64,000 nt of DNA from Takakia lepidozioides (Eukaryota; Plantae; Bryophyta). How positions within the stretch are numbered: the stretch's first letter is position 1; each line of letters starts with the position of its first letter. The notes below the pieces were generated by a model that saw only the letters and a program-made list of their open reading frames with translations, was not told where the DNA came from and searched no databases. Location of the stretch: positions 36,394,001-36,458,000 of the forward strand of contig CM060734.1 of assembly GCA_030704615.1 (NCBI GenBank), read 5' to 3'. Positions 3,365 through 49,012 of this stretch are shown here, piece after piece. The position numbers and the translations under genes were made by a program.

Positions 3365-3396
<32 letters not shown>

Positions 3397-6371
3397 ATGT
3401 ACCATTGGATCAGGCTTCATTAGCGGTCCCGTGGTAGCTGCATCATTTCTTTCTACACTGAATGACGAGTAACCAAGTTACATATCATTGAAGTATGATG
3501 CCAGTAAAAACAACCAGACAAACTAATAAACGATAGCACAGATAGGGCAATGCTTATGATGCCTTGTTGGAGACAAATAGAAAGGCTGTCCGATTAACTC
3601 TTTGGCTTTATGTGGACATATAGTCCGTTCTTCTTCTGTCTCTTCTATCCTGCTTCTTGTAGCAAAGGCACCCACTACGATGCTCAGCTGGTCTTTTAGG
3701 GCCAAAAGCGTAACACTGTCGGGGAAAATTTGATAACTTCTATCTAATTGCCGAAAATTGTAATCTTCTCAAATAGATGGTCCCTACATCCTCGTCGTTT
3801 CTCAAGTTTTTACATCTCAGCTGTCGATCTCCATGCTTCATCCTCAACATCCCTCGCAACCCTCGCTACGCCAAAAAACAATGTCTCACCTGGCACCACT
3901 TGTATTGTCGGAAGCGAACAGCTTGAATCTACTTCTCTTACATTCTGGTACCGCAATCCCATGAGACCAGTCGCGAGTTCCACATAAGAAATTTTCCTTT
4001 TAACAATCCTTGTAGATACTCTTACCCCAGAATGGTACAAGGATGCGGGCTGGGTCATGAGAAATACATGAAACTGGGCCATGGCTACGTACAAACAGAG
4101 AGGTCACTCTAAAACAAGTAATAACTGTAACACTATTCTATACTGAAAGTTCCAGCCTTTGGTTGCCACCATTAAAAACGGCCATGCTAAGATCATTCTG
4201 TTCACTAGAAACCTACTCTGGTGAATTCCTCATGGAACTCTTCGCGAATCATCTCACATCAATCTCGATGAGTCTGAGTTGGTTGGCCATCTTTGAAGCA
4301 AACTTTTGGGACGAGTCTGCATTTTGTGTGTGGCTACAACCCGCCAAGTGTGAAGGGAAGAGTTGGCGAAATCTACCCAACAACCTAACTTACAGAATTC
4401 AATATGCATCTTGCGGCCGAGTATGGCAAACACAGGCTGAAATAGGTTGAAGAAGAAGGTGCCCTACCACATTGTCATTGACCTGTCCTGACCCATGGAG
4501 GATTTGACCGACCATCAACCTAAAAGGACCTCTTGTGTGTGCTGCTTGTGTCTGTAGTCAGGTAATGTCGGATTGGTCTGTGAGATCGAACCACTACGGC
4601 ATAGCTGAGTAGTCAGAGATTGAAACACGCCTGCTAAGACCAAGTTGACTCTCCCAAGAACGGCGAGCTCGCTTCTCCTCGTCTCCTCTCCTCCTCCTCT
4701 TCTCCTTCGTGCATCATTTGCTCAACGCCTCCATCCCACGCCCCTGCATATCCTGCTATCATCGCGTTCCATCCCTCGGCTATGTGGTGTGGCGCAGGAG
4801 ACAAAAAAAAACGCCAAGTCCCAGCCTTCTTTTCTGTTCACGATTACCCTAATGGGCAACCTTATTAGCAACTTTTTAATTTTTTTAAACCTAATGGGCA
4901 ACCTTATTTGCATTATATGTGCCTTCAAAATGACACGTGTAGTGATGTAGTCGTATAAATAGAGCTGTGAAACCATCTTCAGTCATGGAGTCATAAGATT
5001 CCATGAAACGTCGTCCACGTGTAGTCAAACATATCACACTAGTCATATAAACCATCCCTGTCATCATGGTCAACAATGTTTGACCAATGCTCCCTAACTT
5101 TCCGGAGTCATGTAGTGATATCCATTACTACAAAGTCATAAAACTATGACTGCAATGCATTTCAGCGCTCTGTAGTCATCTACCTAGTGCAGTTTTTATG
5201 ACTCCGCCAAAGCCGTAGTCCTAAAAACGCTCATCTCTTGTAGTGGTATGAGCCACCAGCGAGATGGGGATCTGGGACCAGCGAGAGAAAGCTGACCCAA
5301 GACCCAGATTACTGCAAAGTGGCTCACACAAGGGAGAAGACTCGAGGAAGATCAGCGGAGCTCTCGCAAGGTCGAATGCCAGAGACTGATCAGCGGGGGA
5401 AGCACCAACGGGAATGTGGCTGGGGGGATGAATTTAGTAAAGGCGGCAGCTTGGTGGCTGAAGGCAGGGATTGGCAGTGCTCATTACTTGGATGACAGGG
5501 GGTGATTGGACAGAATCGAAGACAAGTGTTTTGGGGAAGTGGCCTGAGAGCATGGCGGCTGTGCTTTAAGGAGAGTTATTAGAGGTGACATTGGGAAAGG
5601 ACCGTCAAGCATGCCGAAGGATGAAAAAGATGTATTCATCTTAACCTTAGCAACAGCTGCTACTTTAGGAAGGAAATCTGTTTCCGAACCAGCGATATGA
5701 GAGCTTAAGGAAGCCCTTATTGCAATGCGATCTGCTTAGTACGAGTGAGTGGAGATTGGCATGATTGGGGGCTCGAAGCAGGCCGAGGCTTAGGGTTGCC
5801 TGGGGAGAAACTACGGAGGATTGCGAAGGAACCGATCCTCTCACCGCAGAACGCGGAGCTCCTCTTCCACCTCCATCCCCACTCATATCTGTCTTTGTCG
5901 TATGGTCAAGATACACAACACTAATAGAATCAAAAGCAAAGCAAGATATATATATATATTCTAGTTACTGAATATCCACAATACAAAGACATCCAAAAGA
6001 TAGCCCAATAATGGGCATATGGTCACTAATGGTTGTGGATTCAAAACAGCATATGTGTGTTGGATGTCATAAAGATGTCCACCTTCCCATTCCTAAAGGG
6101 TCCACTTTCCACCATAAGGTAGCTGTCCTTGGGGGTCAATGGACACCACAACTCTCACGCTTGTTTCTCCGTGATGTATCCACCTTTTTTTTTTTTTTTT
6201 TTTTTTTCTTTTCCACCCTTCCATTTGTAGGCAAGAGCCCTTCCACATATGTGATTAGATGTCATGGAAAAAATCCACCTTCCCACCAGCAGTAACCATT
6301 TGGGGTTACTCACACCATAAGTCACGCTTGTTGCGATAAAAGTCCACATTTATGATATAAAATGCATTTTA

Positions 6372-16290: not shown

Positions 16291-18419
16291 TGCAATCAAT
16301 ACACTAAGTACCCCACCAGAAAAGGAACGCATCTAATGTATAGAGAAGACATGCCCATTTATTTACAAAGTAGATTGGTAATTTGAAAGAAATGAGTTAG
16401 ATGTTCCATAAACAGAATGTTTACCCCTCATTTTAACCATTCTAAAGCCAGGAAATCTCTAAATCTTGAACAATAAGTATCTAGTTCTGAGGTCACATCT
16501 CCTACCTCACCACTGCCAGCAAATCAAAACCCTGTCACCTCAGACTGAAAGACTGTCCGAGAGTATGATGTGCTGCATTGCGGACAACAGATCTTTTTAT
16601 ATATCCCATAGTAAGAAGACCTTATACATCCTCCAGTAAATGCACTGAGTTTGAACACACTGACTTATAAGATCAACTAGAGAAGGAAACCTCCAGTAGA
16701 GACATAACCCCATAATGAGCACTCAGCTGAATCAAAAGTGACACTTGCATGCACTTTAAAAGTTGAGATGCGGTGCACACTGCCAGTGAAGAAACGACAT
16801 GTAAAGAAATAGACTATGAACTATGTAGTCAACACACAACAAACAAAAATGAGGAAACTTGGGGCATACTCGCAGATCGCAACTGTCTTGATTACCACGA
16901 GATCATAACGGTCAATGAAGGGCAGAATTATTATATTCCCATCGTAATCTACCTCCCCTTTCAACTGTACATCAATGTCCTTGTTTGCATGCTGAAGTCA
17001 AACACAATATCACATGACATGTTTAAAAGCTGTGAGAGTCAGACTCAGGCCTTGCTAATTTCATGGATCTCAATTACTGCGCTGTCTCACATGTAAATGC
17101 CTGCCTTGCACATGATCTTGTTATCACACAAAGCTTATCACACATTTGATGTACCCTCATCGAAATCATTGTTGCTCTTTGTCCCCCTGGATTGCATTGA
17201 TTACAAGAGCTTCATGGGAAAATGATTGGGTATGGTGTACCCTTGAGGGCATAGTCCTTGCGGATGTACTACTGTTCCCAAGGCTGTGGTATGGTAGGTC
17301 GTTTATCCCACCAGGCGACACAGCTCAGCCATTACTGCCATAGTTCTGAGATGGGAGAGAAAGTAAAAGAGCAGAGGAGGTCCACCACCATCCCAAAAGG
17401 CATGCTCCAGTAATTTCAATAGAATTTGATTCTGGCTTCCAAAATTTTACCAAAACAGTCTGTCCCTAAATCTGTCCAAACTCAGGAGTTAAAGAGAACG
17501 TACTCATTGGACTTTGTTTTCGGTAGCCTTGTTTGTGGCCATAGACCCCACGCCCAGTGATGGAACAGACACTACCTTCGTGAAGTAGTATTCATTGACA
17601 ATGTCCATCTACATCTGCCATCCTTTATCTCAACCAACGGCAAAAAAAAAACCAAATGGAGTCACAGCCATGTATATTAACCATCTCAAACAGCTCCTTA
17701 TCATTTTCTTCAAATGGTAGCTACAGCGAGCTACATGAGACAACAACACAGCACCTCAGGCCATGTTGGGTCTCACTTCATGGTAATAGAACGATGATAT
17801 TTCAGCCTATCAACCAACCTGTAACTGTTGCTGCAAGGATGTAAATAGAAACCACACATGCACGACCAATCACCAATACACAACCCTTAGTCAAGAGTTT
17901 GCAGACTTGGCGCAAGAAACTCCACAAGGTTTCACAAAAACGAGCTTTGCCCCAACGTGTGACCAACGTTGAGATCAAAATGAAATTGATGTGTGTCTTT
18001 GTTGGGCATAGCTAGTCTCCCATGCAGAACCCCACAATGCATCAAGCGGGTCAGAACCCAGATGCACCAATGCAAAGTACAAGGCTGGAAGTTAGAAAAA
18101 CTGCTCACTTGTTACTATGAATTGTTGTCTATAAATATTGCAGTTGCCCAGCCAACAACTGCACTTGTCATTGGACATTCGACATGTGAGTTCCAGGTCT
18201 GCTGCCCTAAGATGCAATGTTTCAGCACGGCTATGATATTTCCACTCTCGCTAACGTACTGCTGAACACGACATGATATAGATGACGAACCGTAGATATC
18301 TCACTGACCTGCTCTATCGTTCTGTCTTCTCACCATCCCTCCTTCCTAGACAAACCATTACTGGAAACAAGAGACCATACATCAAATGAACACACTTAGC
18401 TGGCTAACTAGACTAGGGG

Positions 18420-29401: not shown

Positions 29402-32400
29402 TCATAAAGTTGATAGACATGTGGCATTGTTTCCTAAGTTCTTTAATTGATTGGAGCACGCATCATCCAATTTTCCCAAGGCCGGGAGTTCACCTTTCTT
29501 CAGCAACCACAAATTCAATGCCTCTTTTGGGACCTTCAACCTCCCAGAGTTGAACAGCTTTCTAGGCATAACCTCTGCCATCCCTGTCAACCTTTCACCC
29601 AGGTCAGGCAAAATTCCAGTTAAATCCTTGTGACCTGAGGCCTTCTGTGATTCGTGACTAGATGATCCATCATGTCCATTCGAAATAATTTGGTTATGTC
29701 CCTCTCTTTCACAAGCCCGAGCATTGCTGGCCTTTGATAATATTGGGATGGTTTTCTACTTCGCAAGAATGTTGCCAAAGGGTTAAAATTAAATCCTCCC
29801 AAATCTGGCTGTACTGAGGAGGCTCTTGACGAGTGGTTGGGAGACTCATCTGGAGTGGAGGGGACTTCATTGCCCAAACACACAGCTGGAAGCCCGAGCT
29901 CAGTTTGAAGAACTTGCAAAACCGCGTCTCGGATAACTGGCACTCCATGAACCTCACTCCGATGTCCTACCCCAGTAATGATCACAAGGTCATCTTGGAT
30001 TCCATCATCATTACTACAACGCTCTTTGATGATTCGAAGAACAGCTAACACTGCTGTCCGTGCCTCCCCCTTGGAAAGCCCATGCAGATCAATGATAAGG
30101 TTATTCATGTTAGATTGGCTGCGAGCATGTACCGCCACCTTCTGCAGCAAAAGCTCTGTGTACTCTGGGTTGCCCCTTTCCTCATATTCCAACCCACGTC
30201 TTATGTGAGCACGGCCACCGTGGTCCTCAATCACCCCTTCAGCCCACTCTTTAAGCAGTCCATGTAGTAGGAAATCGTTGGGAGCATACCCTGCATCACG
30301 CATTTCATCGTATATGGCCAGAGCACGCTGAACTTCATGGAACTGCCCACATGTTCGCTGAGCTCTTAACAGTGTATTATAGGTCACCACATTAGGCCGT
30401 ACTCCAGCCACCTTCATCTGCTCAAAGAAGCTAAATGCTTTGTCGGCACTACCTGCCTGAACACATGCCTTGATAATTGTTGTGTACAAAATCACATCGG
30501 GAGTCAGACCTGCTTCCTTTACCTCCTCCAAGACGTTTAAACACCCTGGTAGATCCCCTGTGCCACTATACGCATCCATAAGAATTGACCAGCTCTTCAA
30601 GTCAGGCTCAAAACCCCAAGAAACCATCTCTGCCATGAGGGCCCGAGCACTCTGGGGCACTGCACCACAAGCCTTCATCAGAATGTTGTAAGTGACCACA
30701 TTCGGCGTACACAAAGAACTTCTAGCTCCAACTTTTTGAGTAAAAACCTCCTTGGTCTTGTAAATCCTGTCTGTCCCATTAAGGCCAGTTTCATTCCTTT
30801 CAATGTTACTAAAAGCCACTACATCAGCCTTTGATGCTGTTTGATGATTAATTTCAGACTTGCTGTTTGCCTCTCCGTCTTCAACCTCTCCACTAGGCCA
30901 CCCATAGGCTAAACCTTTTGAATCAACCGCTCCAAAGGACTGAATTCGCCCACTTCGTTTCCACTCTTGAAAGAGTCCAAAGGCCCGATCATACTGGCCA
31001 CCCTTAACACATGCATGGATGAGCACGCTATAGCAATTCACATTGGGGCTACAACCTGCCCCCAACATTTCATCAAATGACCGAAATGCTTGCTCCACCT
31101 GGCCGGCATTTGCACATGCTCCAATTACAGATGTCCATGTCACCACATTCGGTATCACTCCAGCTGCCAGCATGTCAGCTTTCACTTTCAAAGCTTCTTC
31201 CCACATCTTAGCTTCTCCAAATACCTGCCCACCAAGTGGTTCAAGTGCTGAGATAAAGAAAAAAAGAGACGAATGAAGAAACTGTACTATCTCCAGACCC
31301 CTGCATACCCTTTTTCAAATGCAAGTCATGTCCTCCAAAAATTGTGTAACATCATTGACTTTGGCACACAGCATTTCCTATCTCGTGGCACAGAATCCAT
31401 GTGGTTCCTGCCAAACTTCCTCCTTGCCCAAGAAGGAAACTCGAACAAGTGTATTCCCTCAATAACAGACACAGCAGTGACTACTGTTATAGAGTTTAGT
31501 AGAAAAATGTCTACATTGATGAGGGTGCTGTAAGTGATAACATCCATTGTCAGATCCCCTCTAAGTTGCAGATCATGATAAAAATTGACCGCCAAGTCAG
31601 TATGGCCACTGGCACCACAGGCCTTGAGAAGAATATTGAAGGTTGTAGTGTCACCTGCCACTCCTGCACCCTGTTTGCCCCCATCAGTTTACCCCTCCTT
31701 CTCTCTTCTATCTGTTTCTCACTCTGTAGCTCCGTCCAAACCCTGCGCAGCCACAAGGCTAAAGAAACAAAGCCTCCGCAACCCTCTCGCTCCACCACAA
31801 TAAAATCAGACCTAGAAGCCCAGTTCAAGAACCATTCCCAACAGTTGTCAACAAATGCAATGTACACAAATACCTGAAACACGTAAAGAGAACAAGGTCC
31901 AAATGGTTACCTGCATGTGATGGTACAAACGGTGGACCTCCTCCATGTTACCAATATTGGCATTGATGATGCTGTTGTAGATATACACATTTGGTAGGAT
32001 TCCTCCCTTGATCATTCCCTGCTCACAGCCCAGCTACTCAAGAACTGCACAAAGTGCAACAGCGACAGAGTGACAGACAAGGAGAAAGTTGTTCACGACT
32101 GTCATACCAAAAACCTGGGGCACAGAAACGTGCTTTAGTTCTCTCTGTCTATCAGCAGAAACCACAAACAAATGTATTTCTAATGAATTGCTGCAAAACA
32201 GATTGACTACTTTCCTTTTAAGAAATACCAACAATCAAAAACAAAAGTTGGTCAAGCTTCCAACCTCAAACACAACTGAGGCTTTGGAAGGCTCTCCACT
32301 TTGGCCACAGGAATCAATCAGTGCACGGTATGTAAAAGTGTCAGGTGATGCGCCCTCTTCTTTCATCAGGTCAAAGACACTGAAAGCAGATGCCAGTTCA

Positions 32401-35400
32401 CCAAGATAGCCAAATTCACGAATTACGAGGTTGTAGTGCCTGACGTTGTGTGAGAGAAGTCGGACATAGCTGCACCAGGCCGTCTCAATGTGAGTTGTAG
32501 TTGTTGACCATTGCCTCTGCTCACTGGCTATAATGTATTCCCGTATAGCAACCTCAGATCCTAATCCTTCCAGAGCTTTGCAGGTTTCACCCAAAAGAGA
32601 GAGAGAGAGAGAAGACTCTGGCGTAACTAAAAAGCCACTTCACCATGCGGCTACTGCCCCTTTTCGGGGGTGGGCTCTATTAGAAAAAAAGTAGTACCGA
32701 GTACCTGCAGCCAAGTTTATGAGGTCAATTGGTTGGTTTCAAGTTCAATTTATTTGTGATGATTGCTGTAAGGGATCTGATGGCGGTGAGGTGGATTTCT
32801 GTAGATCATTTGGATATGCCAGTAAGAGGGAGGAGGAGGTCAAAGTGGATGATCGAATAAGACTGTTGATGTGGATGCCTCCACGCACACCAGTTGTGAT
32901 AACATGGAGTGGGCCGAGGCGCCAGCCTCGGCTCCTGAGAGCGGGGATGAGTGGGGCGTATTTTTCGCGTTTGGTGAGTATGGCTTTGTTTGGTTATCTG
33001 CCATGGCAATGTGTAAATTCTAGTATGTGGATGGTAAAGTCACGGTGTGGGACAGATTGGGGAGATGACATGGGTAGGCCTTTGAATAAGAGGATGTCCG
33101 GGAAAAGGCATACAAGGCAGGAGCAAGAGGGGTGTGCGCAGGTACAGGGAAGTAGCCATGATGGTAGTGTGTGGTTAGGTGGGCGTTTTCACCCCAAATT
33201 GTCGTTGCACTCGCAGAGGGTGGCGTGTGAATGAATGGGTGTTGGTGAAGGGCCTAGATTTTACATCATACTAGAGAGTCCAACTTGAGAATAAGATACT
33301 ATCAGATTCGAATAACCTACTAAAGGAAAGATAGTCGTTCGCATATACCACTAATGTATGCCATTGGGCTGCCAGTGACATGCTAGAAAACACGAAGTTG
33401 ATTCAGCATTGCTCCTCTAGCCCCTTAGTTAGCAAGATTTGTGACAGATTTGGCCATTAAGCAAGAGAGACAAGTTGAAACCACTCCTTTAAAATGCATC
33501 AGCAACCTGTTGCTCTCGTTATAACAAATGAACCACCTCTGGTACCTTAGTTCAAGGACTTTGGAAAGAGGAAAACTCAATTACCTGGAACCAGATTGGC
33601 ATCAGCTGTATCTGATACTACAGCAATGTCAGTCAATGCCAGCACTACAATCAATACTCAAGTACAGTGGGATAGACTTCAATGTGCACGAGCTCCATCG
33701 TAATTTTGGGTTGATTTTGGAACCTGGTTGTTAAAACCCAAGGACTGACTCTCTTAGGGGTTGTCCCATGAGGATTGTGCCGTCAGGATATTTCATGACA
33801 AGGTCAATGACTGACTTCTCTCTCTCTCTCTCTGTGGGCACCATTTCATTTCATTTCTCTGTGGTCAAAAAATTGTCTGATGAAAATGATGTTGGGCAGA
33901 AAACTTCCCTGAACTTGTTTCCAGTCTGTGACATGGGGGAGGACTCATGGATGATCTCAAGGGTCTACCCACTCTCGGCACTAGACTGAAATTTAAACTC
34001 AGGGCAGGAAGCCTACCTTTGAACAGCAGACTTAAGCAGAGAGGAAAGGGAGAGTGCAATTTCCCGTTGTGCGGGCAACCTGAAGACAATATTCATTTTT
34101 TGATTCACTGTCCGGGGTTCTCTCACCAGAGAGACACTCTACTCAAATCTATCAAGGAAATTGTGCCTGTACCTATGTTTACCAACATTGAAAGTCGCGA
34201 GGCTGAGCCAAAAGCCCAGGCCCTTCTGGGGTCTAGTTATTGGGCAAACCACACACAGCAGATTGATGCTTGTGTGAAGGGATTTCTAGAGGATATCTGG
34301 AAAACCCGGATCAATGCTTTATACCAAGGTAAGTCTTACTACCAATGTCAGCCCCTGACAGAGGTAGGTTCTGTCCCTTTGTGTTCTGCTCAAACTGGGC
34401 GCGGGGTCAATGGCCACAAGGCTACGGCAAACAACGTCTTATAAGTACATTCTCTCTCTGTGGGTCTACCCACTCTCGGCACTAGACTGAAATGTAAACT
34501 CAGGGCGGGAGCCTACCTTTGAACAGCAAACAGATGCAGAGACGGAAGGGAGATTGCAAATGCCCGCTGTGTGGATAACCTGAAGACAATATCGACTTTC
34601 TGATTCATTGTCCTGGGTACTCTCACCTGAGAGATGCCCTCTTGAAATCCATCAAGGGATTTGTTCCTGTACCTCTGCTAACCAAATTTGAAAATCTCGA
34701 GGGTGAGCCAAAAGCCCAGGCCCTTTTGGGGCCTAGTTATTGGGCAAATCACACACAGCTGATTGATGCTTGTGTAAAGGGATTTCTAGAGAATATCTGG
34801 AAAACTCAGATGAATTGTCTGTTCCAAGGCAAGTCATACTACAGGAGTCAGCCAGTTTCTGTCCTTTTGTGTTCAGCTCAAACTGGGCACGGGGTCAATG
34901 GCCGCAAGGCTACAGCAAATGTCATCCTATGAGTACATTCTCTCTGAGCCAAAAGCCCAGGCCCTTTTGGGTTCTAGTTATTCGGCAAATCACACACAGC
35001 AGATTGATGTTTGTTTGAAGGGATTTCTGGAGGATATCTGGAAAACTCGGATCAATTGTCTGTTTCAAGGTAAGTCATACTACCAGCATCAGCCCCTGAC
35101 AAAGGTAGTTTGTGTTCCACTCAAACTGGGCACGGGGTCAATAGCCACAAGGCTATGACAAACAAGGTATTATGAGTACATTCTCTCTCTCTCTCTTCCG
35201 CCCACATATCCTAAGTTAATCCAGATATCCTAAGTTAATCGACTCTATATCTTGGAAACAGGACCGCCCTGTCAAACAGGCTAAGTCCTGGCAGAAGAGA
35301 GTAGAAGAGATCCTCAAGGACCTGGACCTGGATCCGCAAGTCTTGACCCTGCTGGATAAATCTGACTTAGAGGCTGTAGTGTCCTCAGCCATGTCTGTTG

Positions 35401-38400
35401 CCATGAGATTGTCTGATGAAAATGAAGTTAGGCAGAAAACTTCCCTGAACTTGTTTCCAGTCTGTGACATGGGGGAGGACATCTTGGATGACCTCAAGGG
35501 TCTACCCACTCTCGGCACTAGACTGAAATTTAAACTCAGGGCAGGAAGCCTACCTTTGAACAGCAAACAGAAGCAGAGAGGAAAGGGAGAGTGCAATTGC
35601 CCGTTGTGTGGGCAATCTGAAGACAGTATTCATTTTCTGATACACTGTCCGGGGTTCTCTCACCAAAGAGACGCTCTCTTCAAATCTATTAAGGGAATTG
35701 TGCCTGTACCCCTGTTTACCAACTTTGAAAGTCTCGAGGCTGAGCCAAAAGCCCAGTCCCTCCTGAGGCCTAGTTTTTGGGCAAATCACACACAGCAGAT
35801 TGATGCTTGTGTGAAGGGATTTCTAGAGGATATCTGGAAAACCCGGATTAATTCTTTATATGGAGGTAAGTCTTACTACCAACGTCAGCCCCTGACAGAG
35901 GTAGGTTCTGTCCCTTTTGTTCCCGCTCAAACTGGGCGCGGGGTCAATGGCCACAAGGCTACGGCAAACGACGTCTTATGAGTACAATCTCTTCCGCCCA
36001 CAGTGGACACAGGGTCTATGGCCACAAGGCTATGGCAAACAGCATCTCATGAGTTCTCTCTCTCTCTAAAATCTCACGAGTACATTCTCTAAACCTCAAC
36101 TAGACCAAAAATTAAACTCAGGGCAGGGAGGCTACTTTTGAACAGTAAACAGATATAGAGAGGAAAGGGAGTTTGTCAATGCCCAATATTGGCGTCCCGA
36201 AGACAGAATCCATTTTCTGATACAATGTCAGAGGTACTCTCATCAGAGAGTGGCCCACTCACACACAGCAGATTGATGCCTGAGCCCCTCACAAAGGTAG
36301 TGTATGTTCCCTTTGGTTCCACCCAAACTGGGCGTGGGGTCTATGGCCACAAGGCTATGGCAAACAACATCTTATTAGTACCTTCTGTGTGTGTGTATGT
36401 GTGTGTGTGTCTCTCTCTCTAAACTCTCTCTTAATAGTGAGGTTAAAAGGACCAAGCTTTGCAACGTTATCAGGCCCTTTTTGGAGTACCCATACTCACT
36501 TTGGTGTCGATAACTCCAACCATGCTAAATCTCTAGAAGCCATTTGATGTGATGAGTTCAAGGTCAGATGGTGAGGTCAGTCTTTGGAAGCAAGACCGTC
36601 CTGTTAAACAGGCTAAATCTTGGCGGAAAAGGGTAGAAGAGATTTTCAAATATCTGAATATTAGCCCAGAAGAAGCGACCCTGCTAGACCCTGCTAGATG
36701 CAGCTGACTTGGAGGTTGCAGTGTCTAATGCCATGTCGGATGCCCGAAGACTGTTCTATGAAAATGAAGTTAGGCATAAAACTTCCCTGAACTTGTTTCT
36801 CGTCTGTGACATGGGCAAGGACCTTAAGGATGATCTCAGACCTACACTCGGCACTAGACTGAACTTTAAACTCAGGTCGGGAAGCCTAACTGTGAACAAA
36901 CAACAGATGCAGACAGGAAAAGGAGATTTTAATTGCCCGATGTGCGGGCAGCCTGAAGGCAATATCCATTTTCTGATACATCGTCTGGGATATCCTCACC
37001 AGACAGCTTGTGCTCTTTTTGCACTGTGCATCTACTAAGGCAACAAGGCCTGCACAATTTGAACACATCTTTCTCTCTCCAGTCTGCGCCCTCATGACAT
37101 ATATGCGACTGAAATCGGCAGATTCAAGGACATGTTGGTATGCTAGGGTCCCGCTTTCTTTGACTGACACGGCTGATCTGTTATATCCCTACTACCTCAT
37201 AATCCACAAGGTCTGGAAATCTCTTCTAAATCTGACTGCAACAACTGATTAGGCAAGAGCTGATGCATCAAGCAGACATGGAAATCACAAGATCCCCTTG
37301 CTTAACCATGCTGCAGTATCATGAGACCTTCATGGTCCTCTGTGATGACATAATCATACAACCCAACTACTTGTTTGCACAGCTTTCTACACCTCTAATA
37401 CAGGCATAGGGAGGGTTCCAGGTGGAATCCCAGTCTGAGTATGGAGATAGGCAGATGGGAGAAACAATAACACAGTGAACACTTATGCCCGCCAGTGCTA
37501 CAGAAGACAGGAAGGAGATTGAGACTGAGGAACATGTCTTCTTTCGCTGTCTGCTCTACTATGAAATCAGGGGCCACTTTACTGTCTCTTCAGAGACAGC
37601 CAATGCTAACAGAGATCTTCCATTATGAGGACCAGATGCCTGGAGGCATAACGTCATGAGTCTCTCAAACTTAGGGAATCTCTCGCTATGACAGTAGTTT
37701 TTGGGCTTGTGTAGGGCCCCACCTGTTTTCCCATGAGCTCTTTGAGCTTCCCACGGATGTTAAACAGTTTTCCATCTTCCTTCCTCTGTCCATTGTGGGT
37801 GTGTTTTGGAAAGTAAAGCCTATTCTGAAGCTTCATACTACTAAGCCTTCACATTACTGCAGAGAGAAGCAATGCGCTTCACCAAAATAATTTTGCAAAG
37901 TCTACTAATCACATGGCTTCATAGACATAACTTGTCATTAAAAAAATGAATAACAGGGCGAATACCTGTGAACCAGGTCAATGCTACGTGTGCGCACACA
38001 ACCCGCAACCACCAGGCTGGGTTCAGCCAGCTTCTTTACAAGGAACCCGCAGTCTGAATGCATAAAGAAACAAATCAATACGATCACCTAGTATGTCAAA
38101 AATATCTCCAACCACATACAGCCTTAGACCCACAGTTGCTGTGGGTCCATAAGCAAATCACAACAAGGTCTTGCTGCCCAACCAATTGGCAAAAGTCACC
38201 TACCTGTGACCCAAGATGAAACTATGCTTTTGCACCAACAGCACAACCCTGAGAATGCACTAGCATGTTTCAAACATAGCTCAACCTCTCTGCCCACGAC
38301 CGGCTGTACAGGACTAAGGCAACAAAGCACCAAAGTCCAGAGGCTCAGAAGGCTCACTAGGATTGACTATGTCTACATTTACGTCTCCGCGGAACAATTG

Positions 38401-47314: not shown

Positions 47315-48517
47315 TTACTCCAGCTTCTTGGGCTCTTCTACAGCAACACCTCCAGTGGTTGGCAACCCAACGAAGACCTTGAAGGCGTCGTAGATACCCC
47401 ATTGTGCACCCGTTAAAGTTCCAATCATAATGATTCGGAGAGGAAGCCCGCGGGTAAAGAGGGCCTTCATACCAATCTTGTTCAAAGCCTCAGATATTGT
47501 TGCTCCCTTGGCATTGTTCAAGTAGGAAACCAGGTTGTCAGCCGGGTGAGATATGATTGCACACGCGATGCCGGCAATGTACCCTGCTGAAAAGCTCACC
47601 CCAAGTTGAGTCAAAGTCGAGCACTCACTCTTGGGGACAGGCACAACATACTTGTATAAAGCCTCAACAGTGCTCTCGAAGGTAGCGAATTTCATCATCG
47701 TGTAAGGAATCTGACGGCCCCAAAGAGGAATCAGGCCCTTGTAGAGTCCGGCAACTCCGTCAGAAGCCACCAGCTTTGGTAAACCATCGCTTAACCCCTT
47801 CGCATATCCAGGGTTGGTTTGCACTCGCACCTTGACAGCCTCAAACGGGCACAATGCAACATCGGCAATGATCTCCGCAGAGGCAGAACCTGCCAAATAG
47901 ATAAAAGTCTTGTACTTCTTAGCATTCTCAGGACCCACCAAATCCGAGTAAGTCTTCTTAAAGTACTCGTAGAACCCGTATTTGCAAGCACCTTGTGCAC
48001 TGTATCCAAGCAGGGTAGGAACCCATCCCCTGAAAAGACCGACGGTCCCTTGCTCTTTCACCAGCAAAGAAAACCCACCAGAGATGCTCTTGTACTTGTC
48101 AGGCGCGATCTGCATGTTACACTTTACGACATCGATGGGTGTAACACCCATGTGTGTTAGGCCACAGCAAAGCATACCGCCAAAAGCGCAGGCAGCATAA
48201 TACTCAGGTGTGAAAAGTTGGATCTTCCCAGACTCTTTAGCTGCCGGAATCATGAAACCAGGAGCACTTCCCACAGAGCCTACAGAGGCCACCGAGGCTG
48301 CCTTTGAAGGCACCAGCGAGGAAGATATCCTGCCATGGAGAGAAGCCGGTGAATGGATCCGAGCTGTGCCCGCCGCCTGCTGGGTGAGCGTGTTGAAGAG
48401 AGAAGGGAGGGATGCCGCCCCTCCGTGGGACGACCTCCGAGCCGCAGCAGCTGTGGACAACTTGTGATTGTACAGATAGTCTGGCAGCATCGTGTTCCTC
48501 CTCTCTGCAAGGTCCAT
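47315..48517 (-). CDS. MPT3: Mitochondrial phosphate carrier (PHT3/MPT family), single coding exon, 400 aa
   Basis: CCGLTHMGVTPIDVVKCNMQ, PTLLGYSAQGACKYGFYEYFKK, ALCPFEAVKVRVQT, WGRQIPYTMMKFA, SHPADN, RIIMIGTLTGAQWGIYDAFK. First in-frame ATG at 48517. Confidence 0.96.
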   Translation of the reverse strand: MDLAERRNTMLPDYLYNHKLSTAAAARRSSHGGAASLPSLFNTLTQQAAGTARIHSPASLHGRISSSLVPSKAASVASVGSVGSAPGFMIPAAKESGKIQLFTPEYYAACAFGGMLCCGLTHMGVTPIDVVKCNMQIAPDKYKSISGGFSLLVKEQGTVGLFRGWVPTLLGYSAQGACKYGFYEYFKKTYSDLVGPENAKKYKTFIYLAGSASAEIIADVALCPFEAVKVRVQTNPGYAKGLSDGLPKLVASDGVAGLYKGLIPLWGRQIPYTMMKFATFESTVEALYKYVVPVPKSECSTLTQLGVSFSAGYIAGIACAIISHPADNLVSYLNNAKGATISEALNKIGMKALFTRGLPLRIIMIGTLTGAQWGIYDAFKVFVGLPTTGGVAVEEPKKLE

Positions 48518-49012
48518 CGCTCCGACTAGCCGCACACTCCCCGATCACAGATCCAGCAATAAAAGGCAAGCACGAGAGTGCGAATCAAAGCTCTTCTTCG
48601 CTGCAAATCAGAAGCAGTTAGAAATGCTTGCGTGACTCCGAGAGACGACAGATCCAATGGCGGCCGGGTTGGTGTTTGTGGAGGGCGGAGAGAAAGAGAA
48701 CCATCTCCCCACTTCCCCGAGCTCCTGCCTTGCAAGCTCCTTGAAACCATCCTCCACCGTCCGCCGGCGTATCTTTGCCGGCAAGCCAGCCTCGTTCTAC
48801 CCCACGTCGGGATTTCCATATCCCTGCCCGCTTTTTCCTTTTTCTTTTCCCCCTCACCGGCACGTTGATCACCAATTACATTATTCCCTAAATTAATAAA
48901 GATAAATGAAGTCGACTCTAAAGACAAGTAGACCTTTTCCCTGTAAAAACAACAATTACTAGTAATAAAATTGGATCCCCGAATCAACGTGCCCCTTAAA
49001 CCCTTAAACCTC

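What the first reader, a model, noticed from the sequence alone, without database searches (positions are those of the whole stretch)
33825..37005. A (TC)n-targeting non-LTR retrotransposon that re-creates its own target and stacks into an intronic array
Seen: about 8 co-oriented, variably 5'-truncated and differently diverged copies of one LINE 3' end. Each complete end is GTACAT(T) or a close variant a few nt after the stop codon, followed by (TC)n. Individual units have their own flanking direct repeats that start in the TC tract: TCTCTCTCTGTGGG (33825-33838 / 34451-34464), TCTCTTCCGCCCACA (35192-35206 / 35988-36002) and TCTCTAAAC (36086-36094 / 36416-36424). Known: target-primed reverse transcription gives 5' truncation plus TSDs, and TC-repeat-specific elements exist among animal Tx1-clade LINEs (Kibi). 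Inference: these are independent serial insertions, not tandem duplication. Each insertion duplicates the TC tract and makes a new landing pad, directing copies into a tolerated site antisense within an intact gene's intron. I do not know of such a family in land plants, but could not search.
Basis: partly seen in the sequence, partly recalled or inferred. Interest (0 to 1): 0.85.

Follow-up and report, generated by a model that had tools for sequence, protein, structure and literature searches.

The report
TC-tailed LINE stacked in a moss-type intron
Eight front-truncated copies of one very abundant plant jumping gene (a LINE ending in a short RNA hairpin and a TC repeat instead of poly(A)) inserted one after another at TC runs inside a single intron; this shows a self-renewing landing site, but not that the element needs a TC microsatellite to insert.

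Summary
Window 33817-37005 holds eight co-oriented copies of one LINE 3' end. They have different 5' truncation points and private indels. Three direct repeats flank single units exactly (14, 15 and 9 nt).

The units are independent insertions, not local duplicates. The closest pair (U1/U4, 92%) is non-adjacent. dN/dS between units is 0.33-0.65. U4 matches the family majority at all but one well-supported position.

The array lies antisense in the 5.5-kb intron 3 of an apparently intact orthologue of the PPR gene At5g02830, in a bryophyte-like land plant. The family is very abundant, roughly 10^4 copy equivalents.

Every definable target duplication starts at the 3' edge of a TC run, so TC runs, including older copies' tails, are reused as landing pads.

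Strict Kibi-like TC targeting is not shown:
- Distant relatives carry the same ORF-end, hairpin and (TC)13-33 terminus, and two others carry (ATT)n, so the repeat is the element's own tail.
- One clear solitary copy in the window, and a second doubtful one, have no TC run on their 5' side.
- Clade membership (Tx1 or other) could not be tested.

A 5-bp hairpin inside the ORF end shows covariation. The same family was flagged by first readers in at least nine other windows of this genome.

The parts
33817..33838 (+). Left-edge (TC)8 run plus TGTGGG. This is host- or target-derived sequence and the upstream copy of U1's 14-nt target duplication (33825-33838).
   Evidence: the sequence upstream is not element-like
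33839..33870 (+). 5' junction filler of U1. It has CATTT-type repeats and a further copy of the 9-mer of the duplication (33857-33865). It may be a second, abortive use of the same site.
   Evidence: read directly; inference
33871..34450 (+). U1: 5'-truncated copy, 92% to U4, one frameshift, stop TAA 34442-34444, terminus GTACAT 34445-34450.
34451..34464 (+). TC tail plus downstream copy of U1's target duplication. Its last GGG is the first bases of U2.
34462..34938 (+). U2: 83% to U4, private 12-nt in-frame deletion, tail 34939-34945.
34946..35181 (+). U3: 82-88% to the other units, private 10-nt deletion. Its tail, the (TC)7 run at 35182-35196, later received U4.
35192..35206 (+). Upstream copy of U4's 15-nt target duplication (end of U3's tail plus first 11 nt of U5).
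   Evidence: (D16)
35207..35220 (+). 14-nt filler at U4's 5' junction, a copy of 35226-35239 (the 19-nt tandem repeat found by TRF).
   Evidence: the family's contigs leave U4 upstream of 35221
35221..35987 (+). U4: youngest unit. Open frame 35220-35978 (253 codons) with the CCHC motif, stop 35979-35981, terminus 35982-35987. It differs from the family majority at one well-supported place (35757).
35948..35961 (+). Conserved RNA hairpin (5-bp stem, 4-nt loop) inside the end of the ORF, about 25 nt before the 3' terminus. The same element is present in U1, U2, U3, U5 and U6.
35988..36002 (+). Downstream copy of U4's target duplication.
   Evidence: D16
35992..36054 (+). U5: last about 60 nt of the element, old (72-78% to the other units), ACAT lost from the terminus. 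Its tail is the TC run 36055-36067.
36071..36085 (+). U5b: only the last about 15 nt of the element, flanked by an 8-nt duplication (36063-36070 / 36086-36093).
   Evidence: (D10)
36095..36383 (+). U6: copy with two large internal deletions. Its tail has become a TG/TC run (36384-36420). A 9-nt duplication lies at 36086-36094 / 36416-36424.
36430..37005 (+). U7: oldest unit (76% to U4). It reaches furthest 5' into the region after the RT domain; its 3' half and tail are lost.
37962..38051 (-). Exon 3 of the host PPR gene (orthologue of At5g02830 / MpPPR_69), the upstream border of the intron that holds the array.
32265..32498 (-). Exon 4 of the host PPR gene, the downstream border of that intron.
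17493..17610 (-). Solitary old copy of the 3' end (about 65% to the array units). It ends GTACGT, then TCTCT, then unrelated sequence, with no TC run on its 5' side.
3372..3403 (-). Possible ultra-short copy: GGTACAT followed by (TC)12, with no TC on the 5' side.
   Evidence: identification uncertain

Best explanation
The array was built by at least eight separate target-primed reverse transcription events of one very abundant, recently active LINE family with an AP-type endonuclease.

The element has no poly(A) tail. Its ORF2 runs to within about 6 nt of the 3' terminus. The last 40 nt carry a small conserved hairpin, and the RNA ends in a UC repeat.

Inferred mechanism:
- The reverse transcriptase binds the hairpin, as in stringent-type LINEs.
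- It starts on the UC tail, which pairs with a GA-ending primer left by a bottom-strand nick in or at the 3' edge of a TC run.
- Slippage can lengthen the tail.

Each insertion leaves the TC run on its 5' side intact and adds a new TC tail on its 3' side, so a site once used stays attractive. In this array U3's tail took U4, U5's tail took U5b and U6, and the left-edge run probably took U3 and U2 (their duplications are pure TC, so this is inferred) and then U1.

Shown here: the insertions are independent, the duplications start at the edge of TC runs, the tail belongs to the element, the hairpin covaries, the family is abundant and the array lies in an intron.

Inferred: the roles of the hairpin and of tail pairing, and whether the endonuclease itself prefers TC.
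For: Independent insertions:
- Eight units have eight different 5' ends and private indels.
- Exact 14-, 15-, 9- and 8-nt duplications flank U1, U4, U6 and U5b. Their unique parts are the 5' ends of the next older unit or the flank.
- The most similar pair, U1/U4 (92%), is separated by U2 and U3 and groups in the tree at 92/96 support.
- dN/dS between units is 0.33-0.65, so much of the divergence arose in active source copies.
- U4 differs from the family majority at one well-supported place only.

Abundance and other arrays:
- Summed word depth is 1.0-1.4 million on U4 against 64 on the flanks.
- Other contigs in that run join a 3' end, a short CT linker and a truncated copy (table 5c).

The tail belongs to the element:
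- Relatives L011, L012, L015 and L016 end with a stop, 2-7 nt, then (TC)13 to (TC)33 or more.
- L013 and L014 end in (ATT)n.

Hairpin: 93% of cells are paired, 3 of 5 pairs show double changes, 0 of 500 shuffles reach the score, and slid controls are far lower.

Element type: relatives have Exo_endo_phos plus RVT_1.

Published parallels:
- Stem-loop plus terminal repeat with slippage in UnaL2 (PMC1636434).
- Correlation between the first base of the duplication and the 3' microsatellite in RTE-type elements (PMC6007223).
Against: - No full-length copy, RT domain or endonuclease of this family itself was seen. Domain content rests on relatives with 24-31% identity in the C-terminal part.
- The TC bases at each 3' junction can be read as tail or as duplicated target, so the exact nick position is ambiguous by 0-9 nt.
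- Genome-wide 5' flanks could not be tabulated.
- The depth ratio is not a copy number.
- The hairpin lies in coding sequence, and only six distant relatives support the covariation.
- No RNA data show that the host gene is expressed and spliced.
Confidence: 0.7

Rival explanations
1. Strict sequence-specific targeting. The endonuclease recognises (TC)n/(GA)n, or its 3' boundary, as in fish Kibi. Essentially all insertions go into pre-existing TC microsatellites, and the TC after each copy is mostly duplicated target rather than tail.
For: - All four duplications that can be read start in a TC run with more TC just upstream.
- Two sites seem to have been used twice at the same position: U5b/U6, and possibly 33829-33865.
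- The left-edge run at 33817-33833 has non-element sequence upstream, so it is target-derived.
- Several first readers noted the same pattern elsewhere in this genome (unchecked).
Against: - The solitary copy at 17.5 kb, and the possible one at 3.4 kb, lack any TC run on the 5' side.
- Relatives with another tail motif, (ATT)n, share the same terminus plan, which fits a template-encoded tail.
- An abundance near 10^4 copy equivalents is high for a family confined to one microsatellite type.
- No endonuclease of the family was available to examine.
Confidence: 0.2
2. Local tandem duplication or unequal crossing-over between TC runs multiplied one or two original insertions.
For: - TC runs between units could support unequal exchange.
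- U1-to-U2 spacing is exactly 500 nt in register.
Against: - There are no shared breakpoints.
- Every unit has its own 5' end and indels.
- Adjacent units are not the most similar.
- Unit-specific duplications contain the neighbour's 5' end.
- dN/dS is well below 1.
- Divergence from the family majority differs widely between units.
Confidence: 0.03
3. One integration event produced a concatemer by end-to-end template jumps of the reverse transcriptase from one RNA to the tail of the next.
For: Head-to-tail order with short TC linkers. Template jumping is known for R2-type enzymes (general knowledge).
Against: - Units differ from 76% to near identity with the family majority.
- Single units are framed by their own duplications.
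Confidence: 0.02

Closest known systems
Kibi (and Koshi), Tx1-clade LINEs of teleost fish that insert into (TC)n and (TTC)n microsatellites (Kojima and Fujiwara 2004, as cited in PMC4494074 and PMC3812793)
   Same: An AP-endonuclease LINE associated with TC repeats. Copies lie in or next to TC runs, and there is no poly(A).
   Different: - Kibi is described from animals only, and the Tx1 clade is described as animal (PMC4494074).
- Here the host is a land plant.
- Clade membership is untested.
- At least one, perhaps two, solitary copies lack TC on the 5' side.
- Relatives show that the repeat is a template-encoded tail whose motif changes between lineages.
Stringent-type LINEs of the L2 group, such as eel UnaL2 and zebrafish ZfL2 (PMC1636434, PMC4176376)
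   Same: A conserved 3' stem-loop close to a short terminal repeat. The published model is reverse transcription that starts on the repeat with template slippage.
   Different: - Here the hairpin lies inside the end of the ORF, with almost no 3' UTR.
- The repeat unit is a dinucleotide.
- Function of the hairpin is inferred from covariation only.
- RT phylogeny was not done.
L1 insertion into A-rich tails of older L1/Alu copies; microsatellites as 'landing pads' for plant and human elements (Kejnovsky et al. 2013, as cited in PMC12477314)
   Same: The tail of an older copy offers the sequence that the next insertion primes on, which gives head-to-tail stacks.
   Different: The tail is TC rather than poly(A). 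The stacking seen here (eight events in 3.2 kb of one intron) is much denser.
Plant L1 and RTE LINEs, the two superfamilies usually listed for land plants (PMC9033089)
   Same: AP-type endonuclease plus RT, 5' truncation and target duplications.
   Different: - Plant L1 ends in (A)n and RTE in (GTT)n. This family ends in (TC)n after a fixed terminus.
- zf-RVT scores only 14 bits against a cut-off of 27.5.
- No RNase H was found in the closest relatives.

Membership tests
AP-endonuclease non-LTR retrotransposon (LINE) | Variable 5' truncation with a constant 3' end, and target-site duplications | tested here: met
AP-endonuclease non-LTR retrotransposon (LINE) | ORF2 with an RT domain and an N-terminal AP-type endonuclease | tested here: inconclusive
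   The window holds only the C-terminal 253 codons plus a decayed stretch after the RT domain (U7). Relatives found with that part have RVT_1 (P0005, P0128, P0134, P0135, P0022), and full-length ones have Exo_endo_phos as well (P0037, P0051, P0148, P0142).
AP-endonuclease non-LTR retrotransposon (LINE) | C-terminal Cys-His (CCHC) motif after the RT domain | tested here: met
   C-x2-C-x7-H-x4-C in U1, U2 and U4, invariant in the alignment with relatives
Kibi / Tx1 clade, (TC)n-specific | RT groups within the Tx1 clade | not testable with these tools
   No labelled reference LINE sequences were available. The PDB search gives only human L1 ORF2p (E 6e-32) ahead of R2, which does not resolve clades.
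Kibi / Tx1 clade, (TC)n-specific | Copies flanked by the target microsatellite on both sides (Kojima's working rule: over 20% of flanks, PMC4494074) | tested here: inconclusive
   - All array units abut TC runs on the 5' side.
- The solitary copy at 17.5 kb, and possibly the one at 3.4 kb, do not.
- 3' flanks in the genome are a mix of long TC runs and TCT followed by unrelated sequence.
- 5' flanks genome-wide could not be read.
Stringent-type LINE (3' stem-loop plus terminal repeat) | Conserved stem-loop near the 3' end, kept by compensatory change | tested here: met
   93% of cells paired, 3 of 5 pairs with double changes, 0/500 shuffles; slid controls 10-48% paired
Stringent-type LINE (3' stem-loop plus terminal repeat) | Short tandem repeat at the very 3' end that belongs to the element | tested here: met
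   A TC run follows the terminus in 7 window copies and 4 relatives; (ATT)n follows in 2 further relatives.
Stringent-type LINE (3' stem-loop plus terminal repeat) | The protein needs its own 3' tail RNA for retrotransposition | not testable with these tools
   Needs a retrotransposition assay.
Plant L1 | Poly(A) or A-rich 3' tail | tested here: not met
   No A run follows any of the 8 ends.
Plant RTE | (GTT)n-type tail and no C-terminal Cys-His domain | tested here: not met
   TC tail; CCHC motif present.

The most novel reading that the evidence does not exclude
A land-plant LINE lineage, unrelated to fish Kibi, whose endonuclease truly recognises the 3' boundary of (TC)n runs. It would be the first microsatellite-specific LINE described in plants, active recently, present at about 10^4 copies, a main source of the genome's TC microsatellites, and a builder of ordered arrays in introns. 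Its 3' recognition hairpin would be encoded inside the end of its own ORF.
Probability: 0.25. Interest if true: 0.7.

Novelty: new variant of a known kind. Interest (0 to 1): 0.55.

Why it matters
- Reviews list only L1 (poly(A)) and RTE ((GTT)n) LINEs for land plants. Microsatellite-associated LINEs are described from animals.
- Here a bryophyte-type genome carries a very abundant, recently active LINE with a TC tail, a covarying 3' hairpin and a habit of stacking at TC runs inside introns.
- It offers a plant system for asking how tail sequence, primer pairing and endonuclease choice together set LINE target preference.
- It also bears on how such elements seed microsatellites and enlarge introns without breaking genes.
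- Practically, the family should be curated. It probably explains many TC microsatellites and many 'arrays' that this scan keeps flagging in this genome.

Tried and rejected
- Pfam on the U4 ORF: only a sub-threshold zf-RVT hit.
- Rfam on 32500-38200: nothing at E 0.1 or better.
- TRF: no tandem array apart from the 19-nt junction repeat.
- RNAalifold on the window's own copies: no compensatory change. Covariation appears only with distant relatives.
- Metagenome DNA scan with the 21-nt 3' motif: five contigs, all one locus that shares 27 nt, an old fragment and no help for targets.
- Closest protein relatives L001-L005: decayed, termini not recognisable.
- P0174: no DNA served.
- Protein Atlas, twice: no clade or taxon information.
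- PDB: no clade resolution.
- The GGTAAGT after codon about 215 looked like a splice donor. I rejected this because it encodes a conserved G/E-K-S and the ORF homology with P0005 and P0128 continues to the stop.
- Presence or absence across accessions and species: runs X5, X10 and X11 do not cover the unique flanks, so this could not be tested.
- The search of earlier findings by sequence was blank.
Exons were mapped one by one with tblastn of orthologues.
- Complex prediction and structure prediction were not used, because no binding or fold claim is made.


Full report
**What is there**

Reading 33400-37500, a repeat search and blastn of the best unit against the whole window show eight co-oriented copies of one sequence between 33871 and 37005, plus one more copy on the minus strand near 17.5 kb.

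A multiple alignment (A1) shows a common 3' end and eight different 5' ends:
- U7 reaches furthest upstream, into a decayed stretch that reads like the region after an RT domain.
- The order of decreasing length after U7 is U4, U1, U2, U6, U3, U5 and U5b. U5b keeps only the last 15 nt or so.

Each unit has private indels: 12 nt in U2, 10 nt in U3, two large deletions in U6, and loss of the 3' half in U7.

U4 holds an open frame of 253 codons (35220-35978) with a C-x2-C-x7-H-x4-C motif. The stop codon lies 6 nt before the end of the element. The end is GTACAT or a one-base variant and is followed directly by a TC run (10 matches to the terminal 14-mer within 2 mismatches, against 1.15 expected). 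No end carries an A run.

**The direct repeats**

- 14 nt around U1
- 15 nt around U4 (family D16)
- 9 nt around U6

U5b has its own 8-nt repeat.

Each repeat starts with 4-9 nt of TC and then runs into unique sequence. That unique sequence is the first bases of the next older unit (U2 for U1, U5 for U4) or the short spacer before U7 (U6 and U5b). So these are target duplications that span the junction between a TC run and an older copy.

In target-primed reverse transcription the first bases of the duplication are the complement of the primer. The primer therefore ended in GA repeats, which can pair with an RNA that ends in UC repeats. This last step is inference from the standard mechanism.

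**Independent insertions, not duplication**

- Pairwise identities are not ordered by position. The closest pair is U1/U4 (92%), separated by U2 and U3. Adjacent pairs are 83-86%.
- A maximum-likelihood tree of the shared 250 nt groups U1 with U4 (92/96 support) and puts U6 and the solitary copy outside.
- dN/dS between units is 0.33-0.65. Local copies decaying in place would give about 1, so much of the divergence arose in functional source elements.
- Logan contigs of the sample the assembly probably came from (run X1) were laid on the region. Among the best-supported differences, many fall in U1, U2, U3, U6 and U7. Only one falls in U4 (35757), although depth there is highest. U4 therefore matches the family majority almost perfectly and is the youngest unit, yet it sits in the middle of the array.

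Tandem duplication and a single-event concatemer are both excluded by these data.

**Abundance**

In run X1 the unique flanks have word depth 64. The summed depth over U4 is 1.0-1.4 million. The tool warns that this is not a copy number, but it points to the order of 10^4 copy equivalents.

- In a tiny skim of the same organism (X5), 197 of 9,888 contigs lie on this stretch.
- Contigs from two other organisms (X10, X11) match U4 with one or two differences. None of these runs covers the unique flanks, so presence or absence of units could not be compared.
- Joints in X1 link a 3' end, a short CT linker and a truncated copy (table 5c), so head-to-tail stacking occurs elsewhere in the genome.

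First readers of this scan have flagged the same pattern in at least nine other windows. Those notes are unchecked and I could not read their DNA.

**Relatives and the nature of the TC run**

A full HMMER pass over 1.84 billion representatives found only 121 hits. The best was 50% identical over 123 residues, and none came from a named plant. Relatives that include more of the protein have RVT_1, and full-length ones also have an AP-type endonuclease. The element is therefore an AP-endonuclease LINE.

The contigs of the four relatives closest along the C-terminal ORF segment (P0005, P0128, P0134, P0135; 24-29% identity) all end the same way:

| Locus | Tail after the stop codon and a 2-7 nt spacer |
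|---|---|
| L011 | at least 28 TC units |
| L012 | 13 TC units |
| L015 | at least 27 TC units |
| L016 | 33 TC units |

Two more distant relatives have the same plan but end in (ATT)n (L013, L014).

A terminal repeat whose motif changes between lineages while the rest of the plan stays is what a template-encoded tail looks like. It is not what a shared target would look like.

**A hairpin in the ORF end**

About 25 nt before the terminus lies a 5-bp stem with a 4-nt loop (U4 35948-35961). Within the window copies it hardly varies.

Across six distant relatives the encoded amino acids differ but pairing is kept (A4):
- 93% of cells are paired.
- Three of five pairs have changes on both sides.
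- No shuffle of 500 reaches the score.
- Sliding the partner drops pairing to 10-48%.

This matches the published logic of stringent-type LINEs. In those, the protein recognises a 3' stem-loop, starts on a short terminal repeat and can slip on it (UnaL2: PMC1636434; ZfL2: PMC4176376). Function here is inferred.

**Is it TC-targeting?**

Within the array the answer is yes, in the sense of preference:
- Every readable duplication starts at the 3' edge of a TC run.
- The run at the left edge (33817-33833) has non-element sequence upstream, so it is target-derived. It probably served for U3 and U2, then U1.
- U3's tail received U4. U5's tail received U5b and U6, at the same position.

TC runs of four or more units make up roughly 0.2% of the window's positions on both strands. 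Four such hits by chance are out of the question. This is my estimate, not a formal test.

Strict specificity is not shown:
- The solitary copy at 17.5 kb ends with TCTCT and has no TC run on its 5' side.
- A possible ultra-short copy at 3.4 kb has (TC)12 on its 3' side only.
- In X1, 92 and 61 contigs leave the reference right after the terminus plus TCT and continue into unrelated sequence. Another 111 continue with long CT runs. The first class fits both a nick at the edge of an upstream TC run and a non-TC site, so it does not decide.

The published correlation between 3' microsatellites and the first base of the duplication in RTE-type elements (PMC6007223) shows that pairing between tail and primer can shape sites without a dedicated target-recognition module.

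**Host context**

The last exon of a PPR-SMR gene lies at 29749-31224 on the minus strand. Its relatives are the orthologues of At5g02830, including MpPPR_69.

tblastn of four orthologues maps collinear exons from residue 1 to 819:
- 39627-39484
- 38902-38636
- 38051-37962
- about 32498-32265
- 32021-31911
- 31670-31512
- 31224-29749
- 29620-29489

The array fills 3.2 kb of the 5.46-kb intron 3 and is antisense to the gene. The gene looks intact by homology.

A single-exon mitochondrial phosphate carrier in the window is 72% identical to that of Physcomitrium patens. The host is therefore a land plant, most likely a bryophyte.

**Comparison with what is known**

- (TC)n-specific LINEs are known only as Kibi in teleosts, within the animal Tx1 clade (PMC4494074, PMC3812793).
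- Reviews of plant elements list L1 with (A)n and RTE with (GTT)n (PMC9033089).
- Microsatellites as landing pads are discussed in general terms (PMC12477314).
- I found no description of a TC-tailed or TC-associated LINE in land plants in the searchable library. That is not proof of absence, and repeat libraries could not be searched.

Whether the family belongs to Tx1, to the L2/CR1 group or elsewhere could not be tested. No labelled reference sequences were at hand, and the solved structures offer only L1 and R2.

**Verdict**

The serial-insertion and self-renewing-pad reading is supported. The Kibi-like strict-targeting reading is unproven and, on balance, less likely than a TC-tailed stringent-type LINE with a strong preference for TC run edges.

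It is a new variant of a known kind, of moderate interest, and worth a proper genome-wide target analysis.

Noticed in passing
window 47318-48535 (-): A single uninterrupted ORF of 406 codons encodes a mitochondrial phosphate carrier, 72% identical to that of Physcomitrium patens. It may be an intronless gene or a retrogene.
   Followed up: partly
window 3372-3403 (-): GGTACAT followed by (TC)12, with nothing element-like and no TC upstream. It is either an ultra-short copy of the LINE's terminus or chance.
   Followed up: partly
window 33829-33865 and 34455-34463: There are three copies of the 9-mer of U1's target duplication. The two upstream copies are separated by 19 nt rich in CATTT repeats. 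This may be an abortive second insertion at the same site. Another first-reader note mentions a (CATTT)n tail in this genome.
   Followed up: no
window 35202-35240: A 19-nt tandem duplication lies exactly at U4's 5' junction (TRF score 71). It is typical untidy 5' joining, in which 14 nt of the element's first bases are repeated.
   Followed up: partly
L006-L010 (JGI metagenome contigs), e.g. L006 1150-1199: One locus, present in two sequence variants, shares 27 identical nt with the hairpin region of the LINE and then a decayed TC-rich stretch. It looks like an old fragment of the same family in another host genome sampled by metagenomes.
   Followed up: partly
L013 3295-3360; L014 6425-6480: More distant relatives keep the hairpin and the stop next to the terminus but end in (ATT)n, so the tail motif switches between lineages.
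   Followed up: partly
L016 2330-2420: After (TC)33 the contig continues with a short spacer and then a GA run, an inverted arrangement of the same dinucleotide repeat.
   Followed up: no
window 32596-32612 (-): A (TC)8 run on the gene's own strand lies just 5' of host exon 4, without any LINE end next to it. It is an unoccupied TC run within 1.2 kb of the array, on the opposite strand.
   Followed up: no
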